In this document: positions 39,749 through 62,347 of the stretch, in pieces
Position numbering within the stretch: the first letter of the stretch is position 1
Layout of the letters: each line of letters begins with the position of its first letter
Assembly: GCA_047495785.1 (NCBI GenBank)
Contig: JBLDXI010000011.1
Coordinates: forward strand, 868,001 to 932,000
Source: Lepidodermella squamata
Taxonomy: Eukaryota; Animalia; Gastrotricha
Length of the DNA: 64,000 nucleotides
Reading direction: 5' to 3'
The notes under the pieces: generated by a model
Told to the model about the DNA's origin: nothing
What the model saw: the letters and a program-made list of their open reading frames with translations, nothing else
The model's database searches: none
Made by a program: the position numbers and the translations under genes

Positions 39749-40782
39749 ATGACTGACTCAATAGTAAAAGTGACTATCGGCGAGTCAAAGTGGGCACGTT
39801 GCGTTAGAATGAATAGTTCCGCGGAGAACCCTTTAGTATTTTTAAAAACGAAAATCTACCCCGTCTTCCGCAACATCTTTAAAGCTGACGACTATGGCCT
39901 TTTTTGGCATGATGGTGATCATTTCGTCATCATTGATGACGATGATGACCTCCTGCTAGCGTTTCACTTGAATCCAGAGCGCCTTCATATATCAGTCTTT
40001 TTTGGACGCTATCTCGAGGACCTAATGACGCTACAGCCATCTTTGTCGCAAAAGGTCGAGGACTTGACGAGAATGATTTCAGGTATTTGTGAATATTTTT
40101 ATCGAATATATCCTAGGTGGAAGTTCCTCTGATTTTCAAATTTTATGCTCAAAAGGAGAAAGTTTTCAGGACAGATCTTCCTAGTTTAGGTTAAATGTAA
40201 GCTGAATTGCTGGAAAAATCGCAAATTTATCCCAGTTTTTCGCAGCGCTAGGGTTCAGATTGTTTATGCATATTTCTTTAATTAAATGTCTCTAATTTTG
40301 CATAAGAATTACAAACCGAACCTAAGCCGTCGCCGGCCCAGACGCCTTTCAATGCGCCACCTCTGAGTTTAGGTGCGTCACAGTCTCACCTACCCATTGT
40401 CACCGGTACCAGTGGCTCCAGAGCGGCACCGCAGACAGTTGTTGATCGGACTGGGTCACTTTACGACAAAGTCAAGGAAGTCCCGCTCCTAAAGGCGGTT
40501 GCTAGGACAATGGATGAGCGCCGGGACCTTGGGGAGCCAGGCTACGTCAGGTCAACAACTGAGCACTTCCACCAAATACTCAAGGAGATGGGTACTTGCT
40601 TCGAAGAGTCCTTTGGGGGACGTACCGTCACTAATGTGATGAGCAAAATGAACCAATACAGGGTAAGGCAGTCCTAGTCTTGCTGAAGGCGTGGTTGCGA
40701 GTTTTTGTGAGGTTTTAAAATGGAATGAGGTGGAAATTACTTTAAATCTTCTTTTATATAACCAATTTCTTAGAGGTTTTAA
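39749..40782 (+). CDS. Sola gene A, ~230 aa, PB1-like + Myb/SANT-like: exons 39749-40082, 40307-40662, then 40774-40782 (or unspliced stop at 40677)
   Basis: LFWHDGDHFVIIDDDDDLLLA resembles the acidic OPCA motif of PB1 domains. Exon 2 (absent from the ORF track) ends ...FEESFGGRTVTNVMSKMNQYR. Confidence 0.7.
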
Positions 40783-40791
40783 AATATCGAG

Positions 40792-41163
40792 ATGGCCGCC
40801 ATGGAACTTGATGAAACTACTGCTGAGTCTGAGTTGCGCCTAACGCGAAGCGAATGGCTTGAGTTGGAAAAATCTAAGAAAAAAACATCTAGAAGCTTGA
40901 GAGTCAAAGGCCAACGACGAGTTATGGGTAAATTTGTTGGGAAAAAACCTCATCGAATCGGTTTTCGCCGAAAGTGCCGCTTGTGCGATAAAACATTTTT
41001 CGATTCATCCGGTTTGAAAAAACATTTACAATTGTATTGCAAAAAAACAGGCAGCTTAGCTCTTACTGAGAAGGAAATTGAAGAATTGATTTATTGGTCA
41101 AAAAAAAATTATTTTGTCAAACAAAATGAGGCACCCAAGAGGCGATCTAGTATGAAAAATTAG
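40792..41163 (+). CDS. Basic zinc-finger ORF, probably the first exon of the Sola transposase
   Basis: CRLCDKTFFDSSGLKKHLQLYC. It joins the transposase frame through intron 41150-41216 only if the A9 run at 41100-41108 is one base shorter. Confidence 0.6.
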   Translation: MAAMELDETTAESELRLTRSEWLELEKSKKKTSRSLRVKGQRRVMGKFVGKKPHRIGFRRKCRLCDKTFFDSSGLKKHLQLYCKKTGSLALTEKEIEELIYWSKKNYFVKQNEAPKRRSSMKN

Positions 41164-41216
41164 CCGATGAGAACTAAAAATGATGCATATTGAACTTGAT
41201 TATTGTTTATCTTTAG

Positions 41217-43452
41217 GACTTTATTTTGTCTACCTTAATAATGTCGAGCAATTCTCATTCTGATGTTAGCGCGACTTGCTCGTCGTGCTTGGGCTCTGCT
41301 GTTGGCAATGTATTGAGCAGAATGCTGGACAACCTCTCAGTTGTTTCCGCAACGTCAACGCCTTCTCAAATGTCGAATATTTCAGAAATTTCGAATGCTG
41401 ACTATTTGCCTTCATTCATTTGGCCGAAAACTGAAGAAAGTGACGCGACCCTAGACTCTTCCTCCGATATAGCTAGAAACTTGAAACCCGGTGAGCCAGA
41501 TCGAAACGTCCTGTTTCCACCGCTTCGGCCATTTTTATTTTATCATTGCAAGTGCCCAAATCGTTGTAAAGACTATTTTCCTCAGCAAAATGTCCGCCGG
41601 CTATATGACGCTTTTCAAAACAGCAATTTAGATGACCGGCGCAGCTTCATAATTCGCCAAGTAATACCTCGACGTGGTCCTTCGAAACACCACACTTTTC
41701 AATTCGATGGCGCGTTTTCGAACAAGGCTTCGGCCGGCAACATTCGCGTGTGTTCGAAGTTTTTCCACAGCGCCCTTGGCCTTTCCCCGCGCAACTTCGT
41801 CGAGTGGACTTTAAAGAATAAAATTGGCGATCTAGGTTTCGCCAAGCCGGATGAACGAGGTTGTCAGCCCAATCCTAACGCAATCTCAAACGAACAGTTT
41901 GATCACTGCTGCAGGTAATTCCTTCCGGTCGATTTATGAAAACATTTATTTGCAAATTATTACAGATTCATTGATAGCTATGAGCGTGCACCCGGTCATT
42001 ATGTCCGAAAAAATTCCAGAAAAGTTTATATCCAAGGAGACATAACGCAGCGAGAAATGTTCGATGCATATTTGAGGCACTTTTCAACTCTCTCAGCGGG
42101 CCTATACCCACTTGGCTTCTCTTCCTTCAAACGGGTTTTACGCGAAGCCTACCCCGAACTGTCTTTGAAATTAACCAAGAAAGACAAGTGTTGCAAATGC
42201 AGAAAATTTAGATTGCGGCTACGCGAAAACAGAGTTGACGAGAGGCGCAAATCTATCTTCCAGGTGCATTTATACATGAAGAACGCTGCTAGGCGAGCTT
42301 GCAAGGCCGATACGAAAATGGCCCAAGAGAAATCGGAGGTTGTCGTGATACAGCTAGACTATGAAAAAGCATTGTTAAGCCCGGCTATTTCCGATGCAAA
42401 CTATCACTACAGGAAAATGAAAACTTGGAATTGCGGTATTTTTGCGATGTTTATATATATTTTAAATATATATTATATCTGTTGCAGTGATTTATGAAAT
42501 GGTGTCTAAGAATGCGTTTTGCTTCATGTCCGATGACATTGACCTTGAACACCCTGACGGTAGCTCCGCTGGATCTGCGTTATATGCCTATATAACCAAG
42601 TATTTACCGGTTCACCATCCGAACTGCCGTACGCTGATCATATATAGTGACAACGGCACAGGGAACCACAGCAGCTACTTCGCAAACGCCGTCATGTTCG
42701 CATTGGAAAACACAACATCACAGCTCCAATCGGTCCATCACAAATTTTTCCAAGCTAATCATACAATGATGGTCGTTGACCATTGTCATTCGTAATTTAT
42801 GAATAAAAAATTGGCCGTTTTTCAACTTTTCAATTTTGTCAGATTGATTGAGCGAAGAGGCAGCCGGCATTCCATCAATTTCCCTACAGACTGGCGAGAA
42901 GTCGCCCGAATTTGTCGCCCTGAACAACCATTTTTCATTCACGATTTGTCTTGGGATGAGCTCCTGGATTTCCACGGCGAGCCAAGCTTCACATCAAAGC
43001 TTCGGAAGCCAAAAAACTGGAGAATGAGCAACAACCTCAACTGTGACCTTTTCGGGATTGGAACCAAGCCTAGCACAAAAAGCGATTATTTACCATGGTC
43101 GGAAGGCGTTTGGTTCAGATATCGAAAGGGGACGAAAGCTGTCTTTGTTCGAGACGGCTACGAAGCGAAATGGCCTTGGAAGATGTACAGTCTATCGAAA
43201 AATTCGCTCAAAAAAGTACCAGTAGGAATTCCCCCGAAACTGAGAAAGTCCCCTCTTCCACTCCCTTACCCTTTGATGGCTGACATGCTTGAGATGCTGA
43301 AGAACGAAATTATACCGAGGTCATATACCGAGAAGATTCTTGATCTTCCTTATCAGCCGTGGAATGGCAAACAATCCGACAAGCGTGCAATATTTGAGAG
43401 CTTCAATGTTAGAAAAAATTCAGTGCCTTATGATTCAGATTTTGATGATTGA
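41217..43452 (+). CDS. Sola1-type DDD transposase core: exons 41217-41914, 41966-42435, 42488-42791, 42843-43452
   Basis: VCSKFF..ALG, GHYVR, DKCCKC, LDYEK.L.SP....YH.RK...WN, YSDN, KFF..NHT...VD motifs; introns of 51, 52 and 51 nt keep the frame. Confidence 0.87.
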
Positions 43453-43949
43453 ATAAAAGATACCTAATTTCTATATTTGTATGATATAACATGAGTAGGA
43501 ATCTATATTTGAGTGAAGCACGAAATATAGATCGAGTAAAGCGAATGAAACGAGTGAAATCGAGGCGGAGCGAGCCGGTAGGCGAGCGGAGACGAGATTT
43601 CACGAGGTGAATTAGTCGAACCTAATCACTAATCAGTCAATCAAATTACGTAATAGATAAAACAGCCGAATAACCACTATACTTTGCGTTCACTTGCTGA
43701 CGAAATATCGCGAAAAATGGGAATTTAAATTTGAGTAAACATTTGGATCGAAAATAATTGGTGGCATCCGCTAAGCTATAAGTCTAAGGTCTTCGCATCT
43801 GCAACTGCAGGGATCTGAAGCTGAACTGAAGGGATCTGAAGCTGAAAACTGCTATCCCGATCAAGATAAATAAACTTTACCAAAGAATACGGCACAGACC
43901 ATATACCGTACTTGAAGTGCGACATCGTCTTCTGTATTTCGCATGTACA

Positions 43950-44085
43950 CTATCTTCTCTCCTGTACTTGAAGTACAGTATCTCTCCTGTACTTGAAGTA
44001 CAGTATCTCTCCTGTACTTGAAGTACAGTATCTCTCCTGTACTTGAAGTACAGTATCTCTCCTGTACTATAAGTACAGTATTTGA
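43950..44085 (+). repeat. 25-bp tandem repeat TCTCTCCTGTACTTGAAGTACAGTA (~5 copies), Sola subterminal region
   Basis: Seen directly; each unit contains the inverted repeat CTGTACTT-G-AAGTACAG. Confidence 0.9.
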
Positions 44086-46699
44086 GCCGTATGCATGAGT
44101 ACTGCCCGATCACTACAGTACTAAGCAGTACGGTCAGGCGTGCCGTACTGGGGTGTACAGCTAATTTCAGCTGTACAGCGAGTACAGCGCGCCGACTGTA
44201 CTTTATTTTACAGTCGGTTTGAGCAGTACTGCTGTTTTACAGAGCCATGGACTGTACATTTCGGTACTGCTGAACAAAAAAAATAAGCAAAGTGCTGGTT
44301 CTTCCGCGACACGAACGAGATGTTACTGGTAAGACTGATAGGCCGGTAATTTTTAGCTTCCAGCCGAGATCCGCTTTTCTTGTAGATAGGAATAACATCT
44401 GCCACCTTCCAAACGTCAGGTAGCTGACCTGAGAGCATAGAAGAGTTGAAGATGATAGAAAGAGGTACAGAGAGAGAAGTAGCGAGATTTTTAAGTAAAA
44501 ATTGAGGCAGATTGTCAGAGCCACCGCCCAATTTTGGCTTCAAGTTGGAGAGATACAGAGATACAGTATATTCGTCGAACTGAATGTGTTGTAGGCAGTC
44601 ATTTGTAATCTTGTTATTATAACTGGCCCCCTCCGTAGATAAAGGCCTAAAATTCGCAGAGAAAGTGTCGGCAAAAAGCTCAGCCTTGTCTAAATCGCTA
44701 ACGACAATTTTTTCTTTCGATTTCATCGCTGAGGGCACAGACGATTTGTTTTCTTTCAAGAAATTTGATACGAATTCAAAGATTTTTTTCGCTGAACCAT
44801 TTTCCAGAAGATCGTTTTCCCTTTGATACTGAAATTTTAGCATTTCTTTTTTGAAAGAACTTTCCGCCGCTTTGAACTTGTTTCGCGCATCGGCATCATT
44901 TAGCTTGTTTTTCAGATATTTGCGATACGCTCGCTTCCTTTTATTTTCTAACGAGCTCGCTTTATTTTTGGATTTGCGGCGCCTTCTGGAATTCAGTTTT
45001 AAATTCCTGCGCGGAGAAAATTGAATAATTCCTCTATACATGATATCCAAAAACGCTGAGTAATTTTCGTCTACGCTAGTAGATTTCAGAATTTCCTGCC
45101 AGTCATACATTTGAAGATATTCTGAAAAAGCAAAGAAGTTAGTGTTTCTGATATCAAAAACGCCATTGATGTCGTTTGAGACGGAGGGCGGTTTGTTTAC
45201 AATGTTTAGATTTATAATCATTGTATCGTGATCGGTTTTAGGTAAGGGTGTGAGTACGGTGATATTTTCTACAATGTCGCGAGATTTAGTTATGACCAGA
45301 TCAAGAATGTTTTTCCCAGCGCGAGTAGGTTTTTCTACATTTTGAACAAGATTAGTGTGAGTATTTACAACACCGAGAAGATAGTCAAAGAGGTGTTTAG
45401 TTGCCAAGTCTGAAGCGTACATCGAGCGATAGCAATAGGTTAGTTCTCGGCGCCTCACCTCAGAGGTCGTTGGAGACCACTTTCAGGAATTTTTTGGGGG
45501 GTGTTTTATTCCCGATACCCCCAACCCCCCACCCTGACCGCGCCCTGATTTCAACCAAAAAACGTGCGAAGCGAGGAAATATTTAATATTTTTTACTAAA
45601 AACCGCTCTGAAACCTGTTAAAATTGACTAAACAGAAGGCGAAAGTTAAGTTTCAAGCTGAAAGTGTTAAAAAAGCATGTTCTATAGCACTGAAAACGTT
45701 GATAATAAGTTTTTACATGTTTTTGCCTTCCGACCCATGCGACCCGCAGTCTTCCTAGCGACCCATCAGAAAATCCTCTGCGACCCTATTTTGGGTCGCG
45801 AACCCCCTCATGAGAACCGCTTTAACTCAATCTCAATGTAGATCCATGTCATTGCACAACATCACCAGTGATATAGTACGGATGCTAAGGAACATACTTT
45901 GATCTCAAGTTAGATTTCACTCAGATAACAAGCAGTGTACGCCGAGAAAGGGTCTATGTATCTATGAATGGAGGTAACTTTACTTACCTTAATCTCAACT
46001 TAGATGTATGTCATTGCACAACATTAACATTAAGATGCACAATACTCATACTCATATTCATTTTTATTGCAAATTATTTTTCGTCAGTTAGAAAATAGTC
46101 AAGTTTAGTTTAGCAGAAAGTTGTTTCTTGGCGCCTCACCGCAGAAGTCACGCAGTTTTCCAATGAAGCCGAATTAATTTTTAGATATTCACTGAAAGCC
46201 CTGTGAGAGTTGTTAACCACGCAAGACAGCAGACGGTTCCACGCAGCACGCACGCGCCTGGAACAGCTGAATTTATACTAATTAGCGATAGGATCTTAAG
46301 CCCTCACATCCTCTTTGCATTGAGATGGAGATTAGAGATGTCTTAATCCTGTTCAATCTTGACTCCCTGATATTATAGATGTTACGATCGACTCATGTCA
46401 ACTTTATCTTCCCCGGAAAGACACTATACTGAGATGCATATAATCTTTAGAATGTTAGAATCATCTGTAGCAAAAGATCTATATTGTGATTTAGATACCC
46501 AATACCCACCTATCGTTCAAATGCATGTGAAATGGAAAATTGGGAACGTGAGTAATATTCATCAGTCGCCTCACAATCGCTTCAATGACAAGGCCTTGAA
46601 AAAAGCCCGTTTGCTTCGAAAAAGAAATGAAAAATGTCATCAAATTATTTTAGGAATAATCAAAAATAACAATGAACTCAAATTCTCATTCTCAAATTA

Positions 46700-47040
46700 A
46701 ACCTTCAACATGGCATTCATCACAGTAAACATGTCATGTTGTTTGAAACATGGTATTGTCTTGCTGCCATTTTTAACTTTTCGCGCGCTACCATTATAAG
46801 TTGCAATGTTTTGCTCTTTTTTCGCTTCACATTTAAACAGTTCTGTATCATAAAATTTCAAATGGCGAGTCTGAAATTACATGTGTCATGTCAGGCACTG
46901 TTTCATCAGTGTAAGGCTGACTGATGCGGCAAATAGTCTGCAAGGTTGATCTGTAACGCGTATGGTCGATGCTTGGTGTCGGTCTGAAATGAAGTGTAGC
47001 CTTCAACGCATCAATGTTCACCTTTTTGATGCGGAATGTC
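46700..47040 (+). repeat. Dispersed repeat, related copy at ~63170-63520
   Basis: Shared blocks CAACATG.CATT, TAAACATGTCATGTT and AAGGCTGAC.GATG.GGC in the same order. Confidence 0.6.
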
Positions 47041-49327: not shown

Positions 49328-50206
49328 TTACGTCGGGGAAGTCGTGGCACACGAGTCAAAGCTAAGACCATAGGCAGAAACAGCCGGGCCCCATGCGTTG
49401 GTACCTGCCGGGGTGCCACCAAACACGCTGGTGCAACATAAAGTAAAACTGGCGTAAGCGAACGGGGAGGAAGCGAGTTTCTGAAAAAAGTCCCATTTAT
49501 ACAAGCACGTTACAATTTCGCGTTAACAAACCAAATCAGCGCTCGAGGCAAGTGCGTCCGTGCCGGAAGATGTGTATGGGAAGCGAGTGCAGTAACCTTT
49601 TTTCGTGTTAGCCGGCGACGCAGGAGTGGCGATTTTGTATGGCAGCGTGTCAGACGTCATGACGTAGCATATTAACGTTGGATTTCCTGTTCCTAAAGCC
49701 GGGATGTATTCATAGTTCAGGTTCGTTGCTGTATTGCTGGAAGCAGCATTGCAGCATGCAGAGAACGTGTCGTAGGCATTTGGGGTTGTGGTTTGTTGCT
49801 ACAACAAGTTGAATAAGACAATGGAATTGGCATTTATTTAGAAACATACAGTAATGCCGCTACCGAAGGCGCTTGTGCAAGCAACACCGGTTGAAATGCA
49901 CACCTTGAGGGCTACTCCACTGATACCAGAGCCACCAGTGGATGTACCAGTGCAGAGTTGGAATGAGCCCTGCATGAGAAAATGTGGCTTGTTTTATTTT
50001 TACAGCGGGTGGGAGTTTACCGATGTTTGGCATGTTTTCGTGGTGTCACTGCAAACATTGCTTGATGAAACACAAGTGCTGCCAGATGTGCATGTTGTCG
50101 TTCCGGATGCAGTAGTCGGACAAGGCGTTGTAGTTGTTGATGCTGGACAGCCTAAACAACTAGTAAACAGGGTGGCGGCGGCAAACAACACAAAGAGAAT
50201 GGCCAT
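49328..50206 (-). CDS. Secreted Cys/Thr-rich protein, paralog E (mirror of D)
   Basis: Reverse complement of 34068-34946. Confidence 0.9.
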
Positions 50207-52083: not shown

Positions 52084-55000
52084 ATTACACATCCCAATTG
52101 CCAATTGCACGAAAACTGTATCGCCGGGCGTGTCAGTGCTGACGTCTAGGACTGCAATGTCACTTCGTCACTCGAACACAGCATACCGTTAGTGTTCAGA
52201 TGCTACCCAATATGCGAATTAAGGCCATTTAAGCAACGATACATTGACATATCACGTAAGCTGCGTGAGATGGGATCTGGGATATGATGCTAAGCGCCTG
52301 GTAGGTGGCAGAAGGTTACCATACGACTGCTTGTACATCCGCTGACGGTGCCCATCGCGCGCGGGTGGCACGTGTCATGTTTTGCCTACTCAAAGACACT
52401 GCTGAAGTGACGTTACTGAGCTGACTGCAGATCTGTCTTACAACACCGAGTGTGAATGTCTATCAATCATTTACTTCTGCGAGCTAAGAAGCACATTTTG
52501 GCCGCTTTAGTTGAAAATTCTTGCAAGCTCAGCAATGCTTAAGCTATTTTTTGAATTTATGTGTACAGGGTGTTTCAGAACTCGCGCACTATGAATAACC
52601 TGCGGCAAATGGTTGCCATGGGATCCATAGTAAACGTGCGCGCGCTGCGCCATACGTTCCGCGCACATATGTTTACATTCCTGCGTTGTATAAGGCGCGG
52701 TTAGCGCAACCCGTAAATGTTATATACTATGCAGCTGGCGTTTTACGCTTTATATGGCGCGCAAACGGTATGCGTACATTATAATATGCGCACATCAAAC
52801 ACGAATACGCCGTGATGCTACTGCTTTTATAGGAATATCGCTAAGAATAAAGGCTTCCTCTTGCGAAATATCTGATAATTTGCCGTTTTTCCGATGAAAA
52901 ACTTCAACGTGGACAGGTTCTTAATGCGGCTATGAATGAATTTTAAATTTGCAAAACAAATATTATGGAAATTAATTCAAATAATTTGATTTTTTCGTCA
53001 TTAATGTAGTTTTTTTTGAAGAATTTGGATTCATTGTTATTCACATTTGAAAAGAGCAGCAAAATTGAGAATAATTAACAAGTGTAGTGATAAAAGGTTA
53101 TGTTGCAAAACTCGGATTCCATTTTTATAATGTCGGTGAACACAATTCGAAAACAAAATCGTACGCGCTTCTAAAGGGAAAATGGCTTGTACCACTCCCA
53201 GCACAATGAAAGTAAAAAAGTAGACGTAGCCAAAATCAGCTTATATAACGCTTTGTTAGACACTGAACTTGATTTGAATTGAGCAAATGGTCGTGCCATG
53301 TTGATTTTCCTTGTCAAGGGTGCTAGGGATGCTAAATAAGTAAGTGAGACGCTATGGAGACGCTCCTTTGCAATGCTTTCACTGTAAAAACCTGCTTGCT
53401 TCGTCACCTCACTTTTCAATTCACGCGATACCCGAATAGCGCGCAAAGGTGCTAATAAATTGCGCGTACCATTGAGCGTGTACCTCATTAGATAACTCAC
53501 GTCGCTCATGATGAAGTAATTTTTATTGTTAACTTAATAATGCGTAATAGGTCACTCGTGAGTGTGTGCGCGCGGACGACAATTTGAGCGCTGCGCGCAC
53601 TTGTCGCTTTTTGCTCGTCGTTTGCACATGAATTTTCTGTCGTTTCACAAGTTGACGTTCAAACCGAAGGCGCCTCAGTTCAGTCAATAACCGCCTGGCG
53701 CTTCACCCGCGCTTCGTTTCTAGGTTAATTATCACCATTCAGCCTTCAGCCATTGCCGTCGCTTTTTCATAGATAAATTACCATCTTTGAAAAGCAGCGT
53801 CAGGTTTTCACGATATTAGGGTTATTTTATTACAGTCGTTGGCTGATTAGCGTGGCTGAGTTATATTTTACCGGGCAGGTATCGTCATGCCGGCGACCGG
53901 CGCGGCTGGCATCGAAACACCCGTTTTTTGTGAGATCGTTTAATGATGGCTGCGTTCATAGATTTTTTTACTACGAGAAACGCGTTACTAGATTTTTCAC
54001 TTATGCGGCAATAAAAAAGTAGGTCGGATGCTACAGACTGCAACGCCGGCGAAAATCGTGAAAATCGTGAATAATTTTTTAACAAATAAAATCAACGGGA
54101 TCCAAAAAAAGTTGCTAGTAGCGAGGGATTGCTCTTATCGGGGTTGCTTATATCGAGGGAGCACTGTATACAGCCCTATTTTTCCTACAAAAAATACAGC
54201 CAGAAAAAGTGTGCAAAGTGTAGAAATGGGGCTGCTTGTGCGCACAAAAAGTGCCGGGGCGAAAATAAGAAGAAAAAAATGGCTCGACCCCACGAGGAGT
54301 CGAACCCTCCACACCGATTTCGCCCGATAAATAAAGTCACATTTGCGAATGGCGTATAATTTCTGCATTGTGCACAGATTCAAAAATCAAGTGCTGGAAA
54401 AATACACTTTATGCTGTATAAAATATAGCGAATTTTCGAACGCGTGGAAATTATTGCATTTTTTGTAGAAAGTGCCATTTTCGAACGACAATACACTAAA
54501 TAAAGTATATACTGTTCGAAGTGTTGCGAATAAAAAAAACCCCTCTGCTTCGAAAGCAGTATCCTTCATTGTCTCAACTTACCGTATTTCGCGAATTATT
54601 GGCAGAACCGAAGTTAAGGGCAGACGGTTATGGCCATTTTAACCCTCTTTGACCGGCATATAGATATCTCCCCGGGAAATTAATTCTGACTTGACATTCT
54701 TACTAACTTTGATGCGCAGATCATGAATCCGAAATCCGTTTTCAAAAATACATCACCAAGTTACGTAATGACACACCGGTGTTACAATAGGCGGATGACC
54801 GCCTGATACCTGGGGGACGGGATGATGTTATTTATTCCCTATTTTAAATCGTGATACTATCAGAAACTCTTCACGAACTCTTCACAACATCAGTTTTTGC
54901 CAGCAACGCATTTCGAGGCTGATGGCCAACAAGTCAATGCAAGTAATGACGTTGAGACTTGGACCTTGGACCTGGACCTTTGATAATTGGGTCTGAAGGC

Positions 55001-55329
55001 CTGAAATGAGTGGCGATTCAAAATATTAAGATCTAAGGAGCTGGGTAATGATGATTAACTCTGCCACTTGCCAGGAAAAATGAAAGAACCCTGAGAAATT
55101 CGGTCCAGCCAGGAAAAAATCAGTAATTACCGAAAAATATTGGTCAAAGGTTCCGACTTCTAGGTCCTATTATGTGTTTTAATCGATTTTTAACTGATTT
55201 GAAGTAAGAAAATGAATGTTCAATACGTTGAAAGCCTATTTGACACTTTGCGATGCCTACAATTGAGCACCACGACCGCTGAAGCAATAAATAATCGATT
55301 AATTACTCGGACCGATTTGAGCCTATTTG

Positions 55330-56260
55330 GATGTTTATACAGGGAAATTTTCGGATACAGGGATACAGGGAAGGCGAATTGCGCAATAAAGTAGGAGGAG
55401 TAGGAGGAGGAGCGATATTTTTTTGGACCATTTACTGAATGAATGACCGAGGTATCCCCAGCTAAAAAGTTCTACTTCGCACACTGCGGTGAGCGCTTTG
55501 TCGAATTTTGCGCAACCAACGAACTGGTGATCGGTGGCTCTTTGTTCCCCACAAGGAGAGTCGTCACTGAATCTGCTGACGGGGGTTCTGTACTGGAAGA
55601 AGAATAGGAGGAAGCCTTGGATCTCCGCCAAAACTTGGGCGTTAATGTTAATCGAGGATAGAGCGCGTCTGCAGGTAGACTGTCTCAAGTCATCCCCAAA
55701 AGGCAGCCGACCTAGAAATCTCCACTGATGTACCATCCGTTAGCGAGATTAAGGCGGCTATCCTGGCCATGAAGAACTGGAAAGCTTCCGGATGCGACGC
55801 ATTTACATAGCGAGCACCAAGCGATTGGCTGACGCTGACCGGACTGATCGTGAATATCCCAAAAAGAGGGATCTCGCCAACTGCGACAACTGGCGAGGCA
55901 TCACCCTCCTTTCAATTCCCAGAAAGGTGTTTTGTCGGGTAATCTTGTGCCGCATAAGGGACCAGATTGATAAGCTGTTGCGAGAAGAACAGGCTGGTTT
56001 TCGCTCGCTTCGTGGGTTCATCGATCAAATCTTTGCCCTGCGTCGAGTAGTGTCTCCTGTGGAACACTCCAGCGCTTATTAATTTTGTCGACTTCAAGAC
56101 AGCGTTCACCGCGATGCCTTGTGGAAGATCCTCCGCCACTACGGCGTTCCGGATAAAATTGTCCGACTCATCGTCATGTTCTACACCGGCTTTCAGAGCC
56201 GTGTGTTGATGGAGGCTGGACTTGAGAGTGAGAGCTTAGCGGAAAACTCTGGTGTCACAT
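55330..56260 (+). pseudogene. Decayed RTE-clade LINE fragment
   Basis: PKKRDLANCDNWRGITLLS, LLREEQAGFR and WKILRHYGVPDKIV motifs; frameshifts and deletions. Confidence 0.88.
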
Positions 56261-56301
56261 TTGACGTAGATAGGACGCCGCACTCAGAGCACGCCGACAG
56301 A

Positions 56302-57204
56302 GCCGTAAGGTATTCCGGGATAGCCCCAATGTATGGTATACATCGTGTATAGCGCGCACTTGTATACAACCGTATGCTATACAGCGTGTATACGATACAT
56401 GTATACTATACAACCATGGAGTGCGCACTAGGTGCTTGTATACCATACATGTATACTATACAAGTTGCAACTTCTTGAGCGCGCTTCTAAGCAATCTACA
56501 CGCACTCTTCACAAGAAACAGCTTTTTAAAGCTCCTGAAGTTAACTGTTTTCGAGCCAATCAAATAATTACTCCTCTAGACATGTCCCTCATTCCACAGT
56601 CTGGCCACAATTCAGTTTGGCTGTAAAATTCATACCTAATTTTCCGGAAGTTGAATGCTGAACGCTTGTTCATAGAGCCTAGAGCAACTACCGATTTAGC
56701 TAAATTCTAATGTTAAGCAGCGGGTCATACTTCTACCAACTTGGTCTGCATTTCAGGCAGTGTGCGACTTTCAGGGGGGGATGGGGGGATCATCCCCCCC
56801 AGCTCGGCCGGGCCAGACATCAAAATGAAAATTTTTCCACTGTTTTGTTAATTTTGGAAGGTTCTGGGGCGCGTTTTAGTGGAAAATCTCCAAAATGTTC
56901 TCGCTTCGCTCGATTATTAGCCGAAATGACACGTCATTTTGGCAAAAACAGCAAAAAAAATTTTTCCATCCCCGGGAGCTCGCGGATCGAAGATCGCACC
57001 CTGATTTTAGATTTGAAAACGGCCGTGTTTTTGGTGTACTTGTATGGTATACAAGTGCGCGCACGCATCCGCAGCTTGTATAGTAAACATGTATAGTATA
57101 CACTATACACGCTGTATAGCATACGGTTGTATAGTATACAAGTGCGCGCTATACGCGATGTATACTATACATTGGGGCTATCCCGGAATACCTTACGGCC
57201 CGGC
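56302..57204. mobile_element. MITE with long (~150-bp) TIRs, probable 8-bp TSD CCGACAGA
   Basis: GCCGTAAGGTATTCCGGGATAGCCCCAATGTAT and its reverse complement at 57167-57199; CCGACAGA at 56294-56301 and 57205-57212. Confidence 0.75.
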
Positions 57205-58452
57205 CCGACAGACAAGAAAACCTGTTCACTTTTTTCCTCATTAATATTCAGAATATTTTGTAGCTTATAAAAAATAATATGACGGGGCTCAATTCGAATT
57301 TGATTACTTATTAAAATCTTAAAAATTTAAAATTAATTAGTTCAAGTTTCAAAGATCGCAAACAGTAGTGATTTGGCGCGGTTTCCGAGACGCTACAAAG
57401 AGACCTCTTTAAAGCCTCTTTAAAGATGAAATGGCAGCATCTGCTCAAAATTACACAGAAATTCGGTCGTTCTATAATGGGGCAAAAAATTGTTTACTTT
57501 CTCCTATCAGGTTGATTTTGGTGTCAAAATGTACCTCTCGTCAAGTGGAGTGTAAAAAGCATTACAGCCAATCCCGAGGCAGTCACTCCCTTTCTTAATT
57601 TGCGTCCCGAAGAAAAAAATTCTTGGACCCAGACCTACACAATATAGCATGGGAAAGATGTGTTTTTTAAGTTTTTCATGGATATAGAAATAGTCGATTT
57701 GTGATAGAGTTCAGGGATTAAATAGTCGATTAGTAAAGTCGACAAGCGCTATCGATGGTGCTATCGATTTGACCGTAGCTATTACGTAACCCGTAGATCT
57801 GATTTTCTATGGACCCATGATTCTTTTTGACCGATGTTGAAATTTTCAATATTAGAAAATAAATTTAACATATAAATTTAAATATTTTAGAAATACAGTG
57901 AGTTTCAGAATTATGTGCCCAGTACTTCCTTGTTTGTGTAGTTTTTTCTTATGTTGTGAGTATTCACCACATTCACAAAGCTGTTGCTATCATTATTACC
58001 AGCTCACCAATACGCATATACGCACAACGTGGAGAATTAAGCGATTTTTTCGATAATATCGCGAGGACTGACTCTCTTAACCAGCAAATGCATTCATATC
58101 AGAGCTGGAAGCCATAATCCGAATCATTAATTAATATTAGGTTTCAATTTAGATTAATAGCCATCTTCTAAAATTAATTTAAAACCGCTTAAATTGGGAG
58201 CAAGCACTCCCATAGCGGATTAAGTTGATTTTATGGAATAAAAAGAAATCACCTATGGTTCTTACATCTCCTTATTCATCTCGAAATTGCAAGAACATTT
58301 TAATTTCATGATGAAATATCGCATTAAAAATTTGAAACACTGAACTTTGCCCCTTATTAGTCTGACTACAGTTTTTCGTGTCCGAAAACCTCGTAGTGCG
58401 GCGTCCTATCTACGTCACATAAGGTTTTTCTGTTGAAAAGACATATTACGAA

Positions 58453-58520
58453 TATTTCGGTACTTTTTCGGTAGTACTACCGAAAAACTACCGAAATACT
58501 ACCGCACGACTACCGCAAAA
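58453..58520. repeat. 46-bp near-perfect palindrome plus ACTACCG repeats
   Basis: Perfect 24-bp core TTTTTCGGTAGT|ACTACCGAAAAA at 58464-58487. Confidence 0.9.
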
Positions 58521-58820
58521 GAAGAAAATGAAGATCAGAGTAAGAATACATGTTTCCTGCGGCGATGTGTCTATTTTATCGATGAAATATATTTATTGTC
58601 TCATTTACGCTAAGTTATTTACTAAATCGTTGAAAAATAAAATTAGTTTCAAGAATTTAGCGGTAACAGTTTTGCGCCTCGTGGAGGGCTAAACGGGTAA
58701 ATGTAAGGGGCGTGATGTTGTCATGTGTAGCTGTTTCACAGGAGCGGCGTCGTGGTTTGATAGCTATCTTCTAACCTATTTGACGTTGCAATGTCCTGTT
58801 TTAAGATTTTTCTGTTCTAG

Positions 58821-59727
58821 ATGACAGCGGCTAAAGTATTTTGTGTCATTATTTCGGAGGAGAGTCCGCTGAGATTGGCGGAGATTGTCAAAGGCAACAG
58901 TTTGGCAGTTGTGCGGGAAGCTCTCCGGGTCATTTTGCTACCTAAGGTTGAGTCCGTAGAGCTCTACTACGAGGTCTCGTTTTGTTTCGCGCGTCCTTTT
59001 ACAGTTGTTGCAGTTTTCATCATTTCAGCTAGACGATCGGACCGATGTGCTCATAGGTACTGATGATTGCGTCAACCGCATGGTTGATATGCATCTTCTT
59101 TACAAACCAGAAGAGCCTGCCTGCATGTATCTCTGCCCAGCGAGAGCCAGAGTAGAGGAAAGTGCTATTCTGCGTCCCGCTCAGACATCATCGACTTCCA
59201 CTTCTGGGGCCGGCTCCACGTTGAACTTTAACATGGGGCCTTTAAAGACTCCGAAGCCGCAATCTTCGCAACCTATTGTCAGAAAGCGGTTATTTGAGAA
59301 GCACAAAGTTCGCTTCGAAGAAAGTGAGGATGACGATGATGACGAAGATCCGCCGAGATACAGGTAAGAGAGTTGCGGCCTCTTCGTTTAATGATTTGCT
59401 TCATGCGTCATCTCCAGGTATCCTAGCAAATGGGCTACGCCTTGCAAGTAATACTTTTTGATGCTTCGAGTTCTTTTATCAATAATTGTATCTCGTATCA
59501 GACGACTGACTAGAAAGCGAACGAAGTCGTCTATTTTGCGACAGGGTGAGTACACGACAGTGGAAGAAGACGCTTGTCAGGCGATTGCTGATTACTTGAA
59601 CAAGAAGGGAAAAGTGCTGACAGAGGCAACTTTCTTCGAGGCAATGGCAGCTTTAAAAATGCATTTTGAGGATATCTTTGGTAGCCGAAAGGTAGCCAAC
59701 ATATTGAAAAAGATGGGAGAGCTATAG
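58821..59727 (+). CDS. Recombinase-element gene A, ~247 aa, PB1-like + Myb/SANT-like: exons 58821-58973, 59029-59363, 59418-59447, 59502-59727
   Basis: Introns of 55, 54 and 54 nt give an open frame. LYYELDDRTDVLIGTDD is OPCA-like; GEYTTVEE....IADY...FEDIFGSRKVANILKKM is Myb/SANT-like. Confidence 0.72.
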
Positions 59728-59783
59728 TTGACTGACACCTGTTGAAGAACGAGATGACACCTGTTGCATTTCTTATTTTTAGA

Positions 59784-62168
59784 ATGTCTGTTGTTAAACT
59801 GAAATATGGTTCGCACTTGAAACTTGCAGAGATTACCGAGGAAGATTCATTTGAATCCCTCCGGTCTCAAGCCACGCAGTTATTTGGCATTGAGGAACAA
59901 AGCGTCAGATATTCTTGGGGTATATTTGATATTTGAACTCGAAGTTTGAGAAGTGATCAAACCATCCGTTTTTCCATTAGTCTGTGATCCTGATCCCATT
60001 GTTTTGGACGAATTGCAGCTCAAGCTGGCGATGAAAACCGGGAGCCTGCTCACAATTGAATTACTAGCTAAGAATAGTGACGTTACGAAACCTCGAAAGA
60101 AAGCCAACCACAAAAGTAAATCTCAACTTCGAATCAATGGGCGCTTCACGAAACAAAAAGTTAACTCGAAATCACGACACCCTGGTATAGGGCGGCCTTG
60201 TCCGAAGTGCGAAAAACCCCTTCGTGACAAAACGTCGCTTGAACGTCACCTGTTGTCCATATCTGCCTGTGTAGCTGGTCCGACAGAACCAACAAATCTG
60301 GCGTCATTGTTAGCTGAATCGAAGCGGTGAGTTTTCATACTGAAATTGTGTTGCGAGTAATTGATTAGATGACATCTAGGATTGCGCTATTGTCAAAACA
60401 TGAGAAGAAAAATGTGACGCGAATAGAAGAGGAGATTTTGCCGTCTTCCGTCGGCTTGCCTTCCTCGGTTAATGTGACCGTCAATAACTTCCAGAGCAGT
60501 TCACTTACAACCGATGATGTCGAAGACAAGCCTAAATCTGGTCGTGAAATTGAGCAATATTTGCACGAGTTTGGAAGATCTTTTGAAAACCCTATTTTCG
60601 GATCAAGTAACCGAGCTCGATCAACTATTAAAAAGATTATTGATGGCGCAAAACAAGTGGTCAAGCAGTGTGGCTACAAATTCATCGATGATCTTTATTC
60701 TCGTGAAGGATTCGAAGCTCTTCAGCGACCGTTCAAACGAGACATCATGTTTGGCACGAAGAAAGCTTTATGCCAAGCCTATCGAGAATTTGTGGAATTT
60801 CTGGAATTCTATGATGACATTAACGTTGACGAGCGTCGGAGAGTTCTGCTCCTATCGTTTTTGAAGAAGGCCTACGACTCCTTCAATCGAGGTGTTGCAA
60901 TCGATAACGCTGACCGCCGTGTTCGCATATCTGAAGCTATAAGGAACAAGGAGCTACCAACTTTCTCCGAAGTCTGCCTCGTTCTCGATGGCTTACGCTC
61001 TGTGGTAAATCAACGTGCGCTTTCAGTTCTTTCAACTGTGTATTATTGATTGCAGGCTGATGAATTGCGTGGGAAATCTAATATTGATGTTGACGACTTC
61101 AAAGTCTTCATCGGTTTCGTTGCTTTTAGCCTAGTCAAGCGTTGTGCTATTCGCCCTGGCGCAATGACCCTAATGACCATTTCCGAGTTTAAAAAGCCTG
61201 TGCTTGAGGGCAAAGGGGCTGTATTGGTCCATGTGAAGGGCCAGAAGGCTTCTACCTACAATGACGGGTTCGTTAACTATTCGGAGGAAGTTTACGACAT
61301 TTGCACCGAATATCTGGACAATTGGCGAATTCCGTCTTCGCTGCAGCACTTCTTCGTTTGGCCATCGACAAAAAAAGCAGTAACGTCGCAAGATCTGGGC
61401 AGAATTTGTAAAACGTTCTTCCACTATCATGTCAAAAAGGAATTTTGTTTTACCGACTATCGTCAGTATATACAGACCGTTTTTTCTCAGACTTGTTCGG
61501 ATGAGTCTGAGAAAAAATGGTTCAACCGAATTATGCAGCATAGGTAAGTAAGCTGTTAGCCCTATATTGATTAGTTTTATGCTTTTCATTTAAACAGTGA
61601 TGATGTCGGGCGCCAATATTATGAAATGGCTATGGCCCCCCAATTCCATGCGAAGATGGGCCGAAAAATCGAATCAGAGATGCTGATTCGAGAAAAAAAC
61701 TGGCTCGCAACAGGCGGTTACCTTAGTGAAACAGAAGGAGAGAGCGATGCGGAAGCCCTTACTCACCAGGCTGATACAGGTGTGGCTATACAGTCAAGGT
61801 TGTGTAAATCGTCGTGTAAGCAGCACTTGCCAAGGAAAGAAAAAGCCAGAAGCAACATTATCGACCTAGAAAGTTCTGCAGACTCCACCAGCGAGTATGC
61901 TGCTCCCAAGAGGAGGCGAGGAAGACCCCCTATGCGAAGGACTAGTGCTTCGAGTGCTGAAATTTCCTCCGAGAACAGTAAGGCAGAAGCCTCAGAGAAG
62001 AAGCGAGTAGTGCGAGTTGGTCGATCGACTTCGTCGCGCAGTTCGAGTGCATCTTCCGTCTCGACGAGCAGCACTGGCAGAAAACGAGGGAGGCCAAGAA
62101 AGTCATCCTTTAGCTCTAGAAGCTCGTCATTAAACTCTTCCGAAAAAGAACATGGTTCGAACAATTGA
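59784..62168 (+). CDS. Tyrosine recombinase, ~721 aa (PB1/ubiquitin-like, Zn finger, recombinase, AT-hooks): exons 59784-59919, 59981-60326, 60380-61004, 61056-61543, 61598-62168
   Basis: Candidate catalytic residues IRPGA (R), GQKAS (K), TDYR (R) and MQHSDDVGRQYY (H, Y; formed across the last intron). CPKC..RH...C finger; RRGRP and KRGRPRK AT-hooks. Confidence 0.87.
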
Positions 62169-62347
62169 AATAAACCAAAATCTGGGGTAAATTGCGATGT
62201 TAGGTAGACACGTGTTGTTGATTTGAAAATTACTTAAAGTTTATGAAGTTGATTGTTTTAATGACGCTTTAAAATGAATAATTTGATGAAATATCAATAA
62301 ATACTTGAAATCTACTTGGAGTATGAGGAGTAATTTTTGCGTTCGAA

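What the first reader, a model, noticed from the sequence alone, without database searches (positions are those of the whole stretch)
39749..62168. Two transposons with unrelated catalytic cores share one PB1 + Myb-like + zinc-finger front end
Seen in sequence: the Sola1 element (39749-43452) and the tyrosine-recombinase element (58821-62168) both begin with a ~230-250-aa gene A made of an N-terminal OPCA/PB1-like domain, a low-complexity linker and a C-terminal domain that aligns by eye. Sola: GSLYDKVKE...F...L..M...FEESFGGRTVTNVMSKM. Recombinase element: GEYTTVEE...F......L...FEDIFGSRKVANILKKM. Both then have an alignable basic zinc-finger module ahead of the catalytic domain. Sola: QRRVMGKFVGKK..H....RKCRLCDK...D...LKKHL...C...L...SKK. 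Recombinase element: QLRINGRFTKQK...H....RPCPKCEK...D...LERHL....C...L...SKR. Established: DDD transposases and tyrosine recombinases are unrelated folds, and PB1 domains form acidic/basic head-to-tail oligomers. Inference: a portable oligomerisation and DNA-binding chassis has been combined with different catalytic engines, i.e. module exchange between DNA-transposon classes. I do not know of a description of this architecture, but could not search for one.
Basis: partly seen in the sequence, partly recalled or inferred. Interest (0 to 1): 0.88.

Follow-up and report, generated by a model that had tools for sequence, protein, structure and literature searches.

The report
Two unrelated transposons share accessory modules
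Two jumping genes that cut DNA with unrelated enzymes carry the same kind of helper gene and a related zinc-finger leader on the enzyme, so part of their DNA-handling front end has a common origin, although only two short stretches are demonstrably related.

Summary
Partly confirmed. Both elements are real and look intact.

**Element S** spans 38898-44317. It has 31-bp inverted ends, a 4-bp AGAT target duplication and D..D..D motifs read by eye. "Sola1" itself could not be tested.

**Element R** spans about 58449-62416. It is a Crypton-like tyrosine-recombinase element flanked by 11-bp-phased ACTACCG arrays.

**Shared layout.** Each encodes a spliced helper gene A (234 and 237 aa) just upstream of the enzyme gene, on the same strand. 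Each enzyme starts with a basic stretch plus a single C2HC finger.

**What is significantly similar:**
- the last ~32 aa of gene A (hhalign E 1e-6)
- a ~63-aa basic+finger module (E 5e-8)

HMMs built only from R-type relatives picked exactly these two S segments as the best non-self hits among 2,112 six-frame segments of the window.

**What is weaker:**
- The N-terminal "PB1" domains show no sequence similarity between the elements.
- S's domain has language-model support for PB1. R's enzyme-side domain has a sub-threshold Pfam PB1 hit. R's gene A has only by-eye motifs.
- The tail folds as a confident small helical domain, but nothing marks it as Myb.

Relatives in other samples keep the layout. 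Whether this is exchange between transposons or independent capture is unresolved. Earlier unchecked scan notes report similar helper genes elsewhere in this genome.

I rate it a new variant of a known theme, with interest 0.6.

The parts
38894..38897 (.). Left copy of the 4-bp target-site duplication (AGAT) of element S
   Evidence: A contig joint 38893->44318 with 4 shared letters in run X1. AGAT directly flanks both inverted ends.
38898..38928 (+). Left terminal inverted repeat of element S (CGTTCGTGGCGCGGAAGAACCAGCACTTT...)
   Evidence: Local alignment of the left end with the reverse complement of the right end.
38950..39210 (.). Left subterminal region of element S, rich in GTACAG/CTGTAC motifs (11 copies)
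   Evidence: 27 of the window's 43 GTACAG matches lie in the two subterminal regions. 15.3 matches are expected for the whole window. The inverted-end alignment extends about 300 bp.
39749..40082 (+). Element S gene A, exon 1. PB1-like N-terminal domain (39749-40030) with FWHDGDHFVIIDDDDDLLLAF, then the start of the linker
   Evidence: ORF and GT-AG splice model. ESM-Atlas features match PB1 clusters at 0.93-0.94 with 188-198 of 256 shared features. Pfam gives no PB1 hit. The single-sequence AF2 model was unusable, pLDDT 50.6.
40307..40677 (+). Element S gene A, exon 2. Low-complexity linker and helical C-terminal tail. The segment homologous to element R is about 40567-40656
40663..40773 (+). 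Candidate 111-nt intron (AGG|GTAAGG ... TTTCTTAG|). Its removal leaves gene A and gene B in one frame, separated by a single TAA
   Evidence: Read from the sequence. No RNA data are available.
40792..41160 (+). Element S gene B, first exon. Basic stretch plus a single C-x2-C-x12-H-x4-C finger. The module homologous to element R is 40861-41106
   Evidence: Pfam zf-C2H2 E 9e-4, below threshold. hhalign against the R-type profile: 94.6%, E 6.8e-8. 47% identical in L003.
41226..43452 (+). Element S enzyme exons; exact borders are not all fixed. D1 lies in VVVIQLDYEKAL (about 42360), D2 in LIIYSDNGTGNH (about 42640), D3 in MMVVDHCHS (about 42770), followed after a ~45-nt intron by LIERRG
   Evidence: Frames and motifs read. 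P0151/L003 is a 48-60% identical relative. Atlas features match DUF7869 clusters at 0.94-0.95. No Pfam hit.
43960..44260 (.). Right subterminal GTACAG-rich region of element S (16 copies, including 25-bp tandem units)
44287..44317 (-). Right terminal inverted repeat of element S
44318..44321 (.). Right copy of the AGAT target-site duplication
58449..58531 (.). Left array of element R. Two inverted then four direct ACTACCG units at 11-bp spacing, with a palindromic centre CGGTAGT|ACTACCG at 58475/58476
58821..58973 (+). Element R gene A, exon 1 (first half of the PB1-like domain)
   Evidence: Splice model. The PB1 assignment is by eye only. No Pfam hit.
59029..59363 (+). Element R gene A, exon 2. 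Contains YYE|LDDRTDVLIGTDDCVNRM (OPCA-like), a low-complexity linker and an acidic run
   Evidence: 25% identity to L001 over 108 aa. R_A versus L001_A gives z 10.7.
59502..59727 (+). Element R gene A, exon 3. Helical tail; the segment homologous to element S is about 59632-59721
   Evidence: AF2 with a 5-sequence alignment: pLDDT 80.5, helices at 23-39, 45-54, 59-62 and 68-77. 38-52% identical in L001, L002 and L004.
59784..59919 (+). Element R gene B, exon 1. First half of a second PB1-like domain (MSVVKLKYG...)
   Evidence: Pfam PB1 E 0.0018, 18.6 bits against a cut-off of 23.6. Conserved in L001, L002 and L004.
59981..60327 (+). Element R gene B, exon 2. Second half of the PB1-like domain, a basic stretch and a C-x2-C-x12-H-x6-C finger (module 60079-60327)
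60369..61543 (+). Element R recombinase. N-terminal domain and catalytic domain, with AIRPGA (Arg I), a beta-hairpin Lys region and TDYRQY (Arg II)
   Evidence: 47-53% identical to P0021 and P0067. Atlas features match Phage_integrase, ResT-TelK and DUF3504 at 0.87-0.92. Motifs read.
61598..62168 (+). Last exon of the R recombinase. Splicing MQH|S gives HSDDVGRQYY (His III and the Tyr nucleophile at +9), then a Ser-rich tail with two AT-hook-like RGRP motifs
   Evidence: Pfam AT_hook E 0.016.
62346..62416 (+). Right array of element R. Five direct ACTACCG units at 11-12-bp spacing
   Evidence: 10 of the window's 12 ACTACCG matches lie in the two arrays, against 3.2 expected.

Best explanation
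Two autonomous-looking DNA transposons with unrelated enzymes carry an accessory front end of the same design and of partly common descent.

**The two elements**
- One is a TIR/TSD cut-and-paste element with a DDD-type core.
- The other is a Crypton-like tyrosine-recombinase element.

**The shared design**
1. A ~235-aa helper protein: an N-terminal PB1-like beta-grasp domain, a low-complexity or acidic linker, and a ~55-aa helical C-terminal domain.
2. A basic stretch plus one C2HC zinc finger at the start of the enzyme.

**Shown**
- The C-terminal 32 aa of the helper and the ~63-aa basic+finger module are homologous between the two elements.
- Each family keeps these parts under selection in diverged relatives.
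- Both elements carry arrays of a short motif next to their ends.

**Inferred mechanism**
- The helical tail and/or the finger read the subterminal motif arrays: GTACAG in S, and 11-bp-phased ACTACCG in R.
- The PB1 domains polymerise head to tail, so that many helper molecules coat the arrays.
- This assembly docks the enzyme. In R the dock is the enzyme's own PB1 domain. In S the link is unknown; occasional read-through of the single in-frame stop is one possibility.
- The two ends are thereby brought together whatever the chemistry of strand cleavage.

The common parts reached both families either by exchange between elements or from a common third source.
For: **Homology of tail and finger:**

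**Element S is a bounded insertion**
- It has a 31-bp TIR and a 4-bp TSD, and an empty-site contig exists.
- It sits inside an RVT_1 gene.

**Element R is a recombinase element with flanking arrays**
- Recombinase motifs and spacing: Arg II to His, 26 residues; His to Tyr, 9 residues.
- Integrase-like language-model neighbours.
- ACTACCG arrays at both ends.

**The layout is conserved elsewhere**
- The gene A -> gene B layout is kept at 38-60% identity in L001, L002 and L004.
- The S finger plus core is kept in L003.

**Domain assignments**
- PB1: Atlas features for S gene A and a Pfam PB1 hit at E 0.002 for R gene B.
- Tail: a confident helical model, whose weak structural neighbours are mostly HTH DNA-binding domains.
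Against: - The homologous stretches are short, and the finger part is only marginally above generic C2H2 similarity.
- The PB1-like domains share no detectable sequence between the elements, or between A and B.
- The PB1 fold was not confirmed by any structure model or by a PDB sequence search.
- The tail has no significant structural or Pfam match.
- The S enzyme has no PB1 domain of its own.
- No RNA data exist for the gene models.
- No DNA-binding or oligomerisation evidence of any kind exists.
- Outside this genome the helper gene is almost absent from public protein collections.
Confidence: 0.6

Rival explanations
1. Independent capture. Each transposon family separately picked up related pieces from a host gene family or from a third transposon family. 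Unchecked scan notes name RAG1-like/CMC elements with PB1-Myb partner genes in this genome as one possible source. On this reading the similarity reflects a common source, not direct exchange between the Sola-like and Crypton-like lineages.
For: - S-R similarity is low (about 30% identity over 32 and 63 aa) and older than the divergence within the R family.
- The PB1-like domains are not alignable, as expected if they were acquired separately.
- Earlier unchecked scan notes list similar helper genes beside a third enzyme class.
Against: - No host-gene family with this tail was found among proteins of 102-324 aa or with the S PB1 domain.
- The whole order of parts, the helper size (234 versus 237 aa) and the splice acceptor just before the enzyme's ATG are the same in both. 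One acquisition of the whole cassette explains this more simply.
- The second gene of the RAG1-like element in this window does not match the tail profile.
Confidence: 0.27
2. No specific kinship. The two alignments reflect a generic single C2H2 finger preceded by a nuclear-localisation-like basic stretch, plus a short amphipathic helix. The common layout is convergence or coincidence.
For: - With an S-only HMM, the R fingers (17-20 bits) do not exceed the best generic fingers (21.5 bits).
- With an R-only HMM, the margin of S over generic fingers is about 4 bits.
- The tail alignment is only 32 columns.
Against: - Two independent profiles built without S sequences both pick the S element, at collinear positions, as the best non-self hit in the window, with a 3-6 order-of-magnitude gap to the next hit.
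- The S alignment to the R finger profile spans HMM positions 4-81, including the Q-x-R-x-x-G-[KR]-F stretch and the post-finger helix. The generic fingers cover only the finger core.
- Shuffle p-values are 3e-5 and 5e-7.
Confidence: 0.1
3. Composite or nested artefact. The front end belongs to a separate unit, and the enzyme genes merely lie next to it.
For: None was found beyond the general repeat richness of the window.
Against: - The TIR/TSD of S enclose both genes, and the arrays of R enclose both genes.
- The gene A-gene B adjacency, with spacers of 34-167 nt, recurs in three independent contigs from other samples.
Confidence: 0.03

Closest known systems
Sola superfamily (Sola1) DDD cut-and-paste transposons (Bao, Jurka & Kapitonov 2009; recalled, paper not held)
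   Same: - Terminal inverted repeats and a 4-bp target-site duplication.
- Three acidic D motifs in the order expected of an RNase H-like transposase.
- No Pfam hit, as stated for Sola cores in PMC5751038.
   Different: - A separate upstream helper gene with a PB1-like domain and a helical tail.
- About 300-bp subterminal GTACAG arrays.
- Similarity to reference Sola1 transposases could not be tested. The nearest labelled neighbours by language-model features are DUF7869 clusters.
Animal Crypton elements (CryptonA/CryptonI; Kojima & Jurka 2011, PMC3212892)
   Same: - A tyrosine recombinase is the only enzyme; there is no reverse transcriptase.
- The gene contains introns.
- Language-model neighbours include DUF3504, the Crypton-derived domain.
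   Different: - Published animal Cryptons encode one protein, have no extra C-terminal domain, and no terminal repeats were found for them.
- This element has a second gene, a PB1-like domain and a zinc finger on the recombinase, an AT-hook tail, and phased 11-bp arrays at both ends.
- The His of the R-H-R-Y tetrad is Thr here.
PB1-MULEs and MUSTANG-B genes of plants (Joly-Lopez et al. 2016, PMC4948706)
   Same: A PB1 domain is associated with a DNA transposon, thought to have been acquired by the element and sporadically distributed.
   Different: - Those are plant Mutator-like elements with the PB1 domain on or beside a MULE transposase.
- Here the host is an animal genome and two other enzyme classes are involved.
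- The PB1-like domain sits on a separate helper protein with a helical tail.
PIF/Harbinger two-gene transposons (transposase plus Myb-like DNA-binding protein; established knowledge)
   Same: A separate, small DNA-binding helper protein is encoded beside the transposase. It is presumed to bind subterminal sites and recruit the enzyme.
   Different: - The helper here is not demonstrably Myb/SANT.
- It carries a PB1-like oligomerisation domain.
- It is paired with non-Harbinger enzymes.
Shared DNA-binding domains across transposase superfamilies (THAP, BED, WRKY-GCM1, CENP-B HTH; established knowledge)
   Same: The same principle: DNA-binding modules are combined with different catalytic cores.
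   Different: - Known cases are mostly single domains shared among DDE-type transposases.
- Here a multi-part cassette, comprising a helper gene plus an enzyme leader, is shared between a DDD-type and a tyrosine-recombinase element.

Membership tests
Sola1 (Sola superfamily) | Cut-and-paste element with terminal inverted repeats and a 4-bp target-site duplication (TSD length recalled from Bao et al. 2009, not read here) | tested here: met
   31-bp TIR and AGAT TSD; an empty-site contig joins 38893 to 44318.
Sola1 (Sola superfamily) | DDD catalytic triad in an RNase H-like fold | tested here: inconclusive
   Three D motifs in the right order were read by eye. No structure model was possible because the core is split by introns. 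Pfam has no Sola model.
Sola1 (Sola superfamily) | Sequence similarity to reference Sola1 transposases (Repbase; profile E.10 of Majorek et al. 2014) | not testable with these tools
   No reference sequences or profiles are on hand. The only labelled neighbours are DUF7869 clusters, by language-model features.
Crypton (tyrosine-recombinase DNA transposon) | Encodes a tyrosine recombinase with the R-H-R-Y tetrad | tested here: inconclusive
   Arg I (AIRPGA), Arg II (TDYR), His III and Tyr (HSDDVGRQYY) are present at canonical spacing. The His before Arg II is Thr. No Pfam or PDB sequence hit. Atlas features are integrase-like at 0.87-0.92.
Crypton (tyrosine-recombinase DNA transposon) | No reverse transcriptase or other polymerase in the element (separates it from DIRS/Ngaro) | tested here: met
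   Only gene A and gene B lie between the flanking arrays, and no RT hit was found.
Crypton (tyrosine-recombinase DNA transposon) | Single-protein element without terminal repeats (animal Cryptons as published) | tested here: not met
   Two genes, and phased ACTACCG arrays at both ends, in contrast to PMC3212892.
PB1 domain (PF00564) | Pfam PB1 match above the gathering score | tested here: not met
   The best hit is the first half-domain of R gene B: 18.6 bits against a cut-off of 23.6, E 0.0018. There is none for S gene A or R gene A. The domains of R are split by introns, so only halves could be scanned.
PB1 domain (PF00564) | Ubiquitin-like beta-grasp fold | tested here: inconclusive
   The single-sequence AF2 model of S gene A reached pLDDT 50.6 and is unusable. 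Atlas features place it among PB1 clusters at 0.93-0.94 with 188-198 shared features.
PB1 domain (PF00564) | Conserved Lys on strand 1 and/or an acidic OPCA motif | tested here: met
   Read directly from the sequences. IVKVTIG ... FWHDGDHFVIIDDDDDLLLAF (S gene A). AKVFCVI ... YYELDDRTDVLIGTDDCVNRM (R gene A). VVKLKYG ... CDPDPIVLDELQLKLA (R gene B). These are by-eye motif matches.
Myb/SANT-like DNA-binding domain | Pfam or structural match to Myb/SANT, with three helices and spaced aromatic residues | tested here: not met
   The helical model is confident (pLDDT 80.5). No Pfam hit in any of five tails. Foldseek PDB E >= 1. The best VIA Z is 4.3, shared by TetR, Myb, TRF, GARP and homeodomain HTH domains. 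Atlas fold search gave nothing specific.
C2H2-type zinc finger | C-x2-C-x12-H-x3-6-H/C ligand pattern and a Pfam zf-C2H2 match | tested here: inconclusive
   The ligand pattern is present in S, R, P0011, P0021, P0067 and L003 as a C2HC variant. Pfam zf-C2H2 gives 18-20 bits, below the 25.2 cut-off.

The most novel reading that the evidence does not exclude
In this animal lineage a portable accessory cassette has moved as a unit between transposons that use chemically unrelated enzymes. These are DDD cut-and-paste elements, tyrosine-recombinase elements and, per unchecked scan notes, RAG1-fold elements.

The cassette consists of a helper protein, with a PB1 polymerising domain and a small helical DNA-binding tail, plus a matching basic zinc-finger leader on the enzyme.

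On this reading the cassette acts as an enzyme-independent scaffold. It coats phased subterminal motif arrays and pairs the element's ends.
Probability: 0.3. Interest if true: 0.8.

Novelty: new variant of a known kind. Interest (0 to 1): 0.6.

Why it matters
If the shared front end is one cassette, then recognising and pairing a transposon's ends can be separated from the chemistry of cutting, and can be swapped between enzyme classes. That would be a new kind of modularity for eukaryotic mobile DNA.

It would also:
- add a two-gene, array-flanked branch to the animal Cryptons, which are described as single-gene elements without terminal repeats;
- extend PB1-carrying transposons from plant MULEs to animal elements;
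- give a concrete, testable model for how phased subterminal repeats are read, namely a polymerising DNA-binding helper.

If only the finger and a 32-aa helix are shared, the result is a modest addition to the known shuffling of DNA-binding domains among transposases.

Tried and rejected
1. **Searches for relatives of the helper gene.**
   - The S PB1 domain found nothing among proteins of 103-329 aa.
   - A five-sequence gene A profile found only L001's own ORF.
   - So I could not tabulate which enzymes lie downstream of gene A outside this genome.
2. **The one exhaustive search, run with a mixed finger profile.**
   - It was swamped by multi-finger C2H2 proteins.
   - Only three true hits emerged, all R-type.
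3. **Exact look-ups** of the exon ORFs S_C4 and R_C1 found nothing.
4. **PB1 fold.**
   - The single-sequence AF2 model was too poor to search.
   - A MAFFT alignment of half-domain fragments was visibly misaligned, so I did not use it.
   - PDB sequence searches with S gene A and with an R gene B profile gave only noise.
5. **Tail fold.** Foldseek PDB, VIA wide and the Atlas fold search gave no significant or specific match.
6. **A third enzyme class in this window.** The second gene of the RAG1-like element at 6064-9479 (ORF 8546-8809, minus strand) does not match the tail profile; hhalign probability is 0.4%.
7. **RNA evidence for the splice models and the A/B junction.** No RNA runs hold these sequences.
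8. **Read-through idea.**
   - An in-frame single stop after a small intron is possible in the window's S and R elements and in L004.
   - L001 and L002 have no usable donor, so the feature is not conserved.
9. **Source papers.** The Sola description and the Yuan & Wessler catalytic-domain paper are not held.
10. **Steps skipped.** Spliced proteins have no reference, so I did not send them to the Pfam, structure or database tools. I joined exons only inside scripts.

The single read-laying run used 5,601 letters.

Full report
**What is in the window.** The region is eukaryotic, intron-bearing and rich in repeats. The finding covers two gene clusters, both on the + strand.

With canonical GT-AG introns:
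- The first cluster gives a 234-aa gene A (39749-40082 + 40307-40677). It is followed 114 nt later by a multi-exon enzyme gene (40792-43452).
- The second cluster gives a 237-aa gene A (58821-58973 + 59029-59363 + 59502-59727). It is followed 56 nt later by a multi-exon enzyme gene (59784-62168).

- I laid the contigs of the one public run that holds this DNA on 38800-44400. One contig joins 38893 directly to 44318, with 4 letters shared by both sides.
- The sequence shows AGAT on both sides of a 5,420-bp insert (38898-44317). Its ends are a 31-bp inverted repeat beginning CGTTCGTG(G/T)CGCGGAAGAACCAGCACTTT. An imperfect inverted alignment runs about 300 bp inward.
- Those subterminal regions hold 27 of the window's 43 GTACAG matches, against 15.3 expected for the whole window.
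- The insert interrupts a reverse-transcriptase gene: RVT_1, E 6.5e-20, abuts the left end.
- The enzyme has three acidic motifs in the order of an RNase H-like transposase: VVVIQLDYEKAL, LIIYSDNGTGNH, and MMVVDHCHS followed after a ~45-nt intron by LIERRG.
- Pfam finds nothing. That fits the published statement that Sola cores have no Pfam model (PMC5751038).
- Language-model neighbours are DUF7869 clusters (0.94-0.95).
- So TIRs, a 4-bp TSD and the DDD motifs read by eye all fit a cut-and-paste element. The specific label Sola1 could not be tested.

**Element R is a Crypton-like tyrosine-recombinase element.**
- The enzyme carries AIRPGA (Arg I) and TDYRQY (Arg II).
- After splicing MQH|S across a 54-nt intron it reads HSDDVGRQYY. 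Arg II to His is 26 residues and His to Tyr is 9, which is the canonical spacing. The His that normally precedes Arg II is Thr.
- Language-model neighbours are Phage_integrase, ResT/TelK and DUF3504 clusters (0.87-0.92). Pfam and PDB sequence searches are silent.
- There is no reverse transcriptase.
- The two genes are flanked by arrays of ACTACCG at 11-bp spacing. The left array, 58449-58531, has a palindromic centre. The right array is 62346-62416. Ten of the window's 12 matches lie there, against 3.2 expected.
- The C-terminus is Ser-rich with two AT-hook-like motifs.
- Published animal Cryptons encode one protein and showed no terminal repeats (PMC3212892). This is therefore a variant, not a standard member.

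1. *Pairwise comparison.*
   - Among 56 piece-by-piece BLASTP comparisons, only two pairs stand out: tail versus tail (E 7e-5) and finger versus finger (E 1e-5). They are collinear.
   - Smith-Waterman scores exceed all 2,000 shuffles: z 7.6 and 10.8, Gumbel p 3e-5 and 5e-7.

2. *Profiles from independent relatives.*
   - The exhaustive search returned three genuine relatives of the R finger: P0011, P0021 and P0067.
   - Their contigs L001, L002 and L004 also hold gene A.
   - An R-only tail profile matches the S tail with hhalign probability 90.7%, E 1.3e-6, over 32 columns.
   - An R-only finger profile matches the S finger with 94.6%, E 6.8e-8, over 63 columns. The match includes the Q-x-R-x-x-G-[KR]-F stretch before the finger and the helix after it.
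   - A two-sequence S profile (window + L003) gives 94.8%.

3. *An unbiased scan.*
   - I searched HMMs built without any S sequence against all 2,112 open six-frame segments of the window.
   - They pick the S tail (E 2.3e-4; next best 1.5) and the S finger exon (E 8.3e-7; next best 0.31).

*Control.*
- I compared against about 150 multi-finger proteins that were the best finger matches in 1.84 billion proteins.
- With the R-only HMM, S scores 26.3 bits over nearly the whole model. The best generic finger scores 22.0 bits over the finger core only.
- In the reverse direction, the R fingers (17-20 bits) do not beat the best generic finger (21.5 bits).

I conclude that the tail and the finger module are homologous between the elements. 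The kinship is old and short, and the finger alone would not carry the case.

**The PB1 claim.**
- The N-terminal domains of the two gene A proteins are not similar in sequence: z 0.6, hhalign probability 0.4%.
- The A-type and B-type domains are also not similar: probability 0.5%, with the best pairwise p at 0.01 to 0.04.
- Independent support is partial.
  - S gene A sits among PB1 clusters by language-model features: 0.93-0.94, with 188-198 of 256 features shared.
  - The first half of the R enzyme's N-terminal domain hits Pfam PB1 at E 0.0018, below threshold.
  - All domains show a strand-1 Lys and an acidic OPCA-like motif by eye.
- The only contiguous domain folded poorly without an alignment (pLDDT 50.6). 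No usable alignment could be built.
- PB1 is therefore likely for S gene A and R gene B. It is plausible but untested for R gene A.

**The Myb claim.**
- With five sequences, the tail folds confidently: pLDDT 80.5, about 90 over residues 21-78, with helices at 23-39, 45-54, 59-62 and 68-77.
- Foldseek finds nothing in the PDB (E >= 1).
- The exhaustive structural search peaks at Z 4.3. Its list is dominated by three-helix HTH DNA-binding domains: TetR N-domains, TEBP, TRF1, LUX, ARR1, GT-1, Zeste and KNL-2. By the tool's own guidance these values are not significant.
- The Atlas fold search and Pfam give nothing.
- The tail is a small helical, HTH-compatible domain. 'Myb-like' is not shown.

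**Is the front end part of each family?** Yes.
- L001 and L002 (one metagenome assembly) and L004 (a sequencing run) keep the full R-type order. That order is gene A, with the OPCA-like half-domain (seen only in L001), linker and tail. A 34-167-nt spacer follows, then a PB1 exon, an intron, the basic+finger module and the recombinase N-domain.
- Identity to the window copy is 38-61%.
- L003 keeps the S-type finger (47% identical), followed by the S enzyme (48-60%).
- L003 and L004 come from the same run, so both families also co-occur in that other sample.
- All five loci have a pyrimidine tract plus AG immediately before the enzyme's ATG.
- Removing a small intron would leave gene A and gene B in one frame with a single stop in the window's S and R elements and in L004. 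L001 and L002 lack a usable donor, so read-through is not a conserved feature (compare the scan note s1-430987).

**Mechanism.** Everything here is inferred except the anatomy. A helper protein with a DNA-binding tail and a head-to-tail polymerising domain, encoded next to an enzyme with a basic finger, on elements whose ends carry many copies of a short motif, suggests the following. The helper coats the subterminal arrays and recruits the enzyme. In R the enzyme's own PB1-like domain offers the dock. In S the link is unknown. I found no data on binding, assembly or expression, and no RNA run holds these sequences.

**Origin.** S-R similarity (about 30%) is lower than similarity within the R family. 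There is no sign of recent recombination. Direct exchange between elements and independent capture from a common third source both fit. I found no host family with this tail. The second gene of the RAG1-like element in this window does not match the tail profile. Unchecked first-stage scan notes report PB1 + Myb-like helper genes beside Sola-like, recombinase and RAG1-like elements elsewhere in this genome. These are leads from the same kind of reader, not independent evidence.

**Comparison with known systems.**
- PB1 domains on transposons are described for plant MULEs and the derived MUSTANG-B genes (PMC4948706).
- Helper DNA-binding genes are standard in PIF/Harbinger elements, and single DNA-binding domains are widely shared among DDE transposases (both established knowledge).
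- No paper in the library combined 'PB1 domain' with 'Crypton'. Of the 55 papers holding 'PB1 domain' and 'transposon', I saw 15 titles and read one, the plant MULE paper.
- The present case is a new variant: a multi-part cassette, partly homologous, on a DDD-type and on a tyrosine-recombinase element in an animal.

**Verdict.**
- Novelty: new variant of a known kind.
- Interest: 0.6.

Noticed in passing
window 37703-38888 (-) and 44322-45458 (-): Element S is inserted into the reverse-transcriptase gene of a non-LTR retrotransposon. RVT_1 (E 6.5e-20) abuts the left end, and a contig in run X1 shows the uninterrupted form.
   Followed up: partly
window 40682->43183: One low-depth contig in run X1 joins 40682 to 43183. 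This is an internally deleted copy of element S that keeps the whole of gene A and loses almost all of the enzyme gene.
   Followed up: no
window 43475-43661: A short stretch inside element S, downstream of the enzyme gene, has about 20-fold higher contig depth than its surroundings. It carries CGAG at roughly 10-bp phasing (43533-43603), so it is probably a high-copy short repeat or MITE-like piece. On the left side, GACGCGACGATA repeats lie at 39327-39372.
   Followed up: no
window 59770-59783, 40762-40773; L001 1405-1421; L002 1280-1299; L004 455-477: All five loci have a pyrimidine tract plus AG directly upstream of the enzyme's ATG. This suggests the enzyme is translated from a spliced, possibly alternatively spliced, message.
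   Followed up: partly
window 61410-61420 (TDYRQY): In the recombinase, the His of the canonical H-x-x-R box is Thr. The other catalytic positions and their spacing are canonical. No relative covering this region was available to check whether the change is conserved.
   Followed up: no
window 61900-62140: The recombinase ends in a Ser-rich tail with two RGRP AT-hook-like motifs. The flanking arrays have A-rich spacers (ACTACCGAAAAA), a possible match for minor-groove binding.
   Followed up: no
L003 and L004: The only S-type relative and one of the R-type relatives found in public data come from the same sequencing run (SRR21620664). Each is about 60% identical to the window copy at best. So the two families also co-occur in that other sample.
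   Followed up: no
L001 307-425: Upstream of the R-type gene A in L001 there is a palindromic pair of 26-nt repeats (ACTTCCTATTCGCATTTCCTCAAGGT, with an inverted TTGCCTTGAGGAAAT). This may be the counterpart of the palindromic left array of the window's element, with a different motif.
   Followed up: no
window 8546-9342 (-): The convergent second gene of the RAG1-like element at 6064-9479 has a W-rich, Myb/SANT-looking segment (EWTFSDRNRL...FWMRITL...GRSQNAICRQISKL). It shows no detectable similarity to the gene A tail profile.
   Followed up: partly
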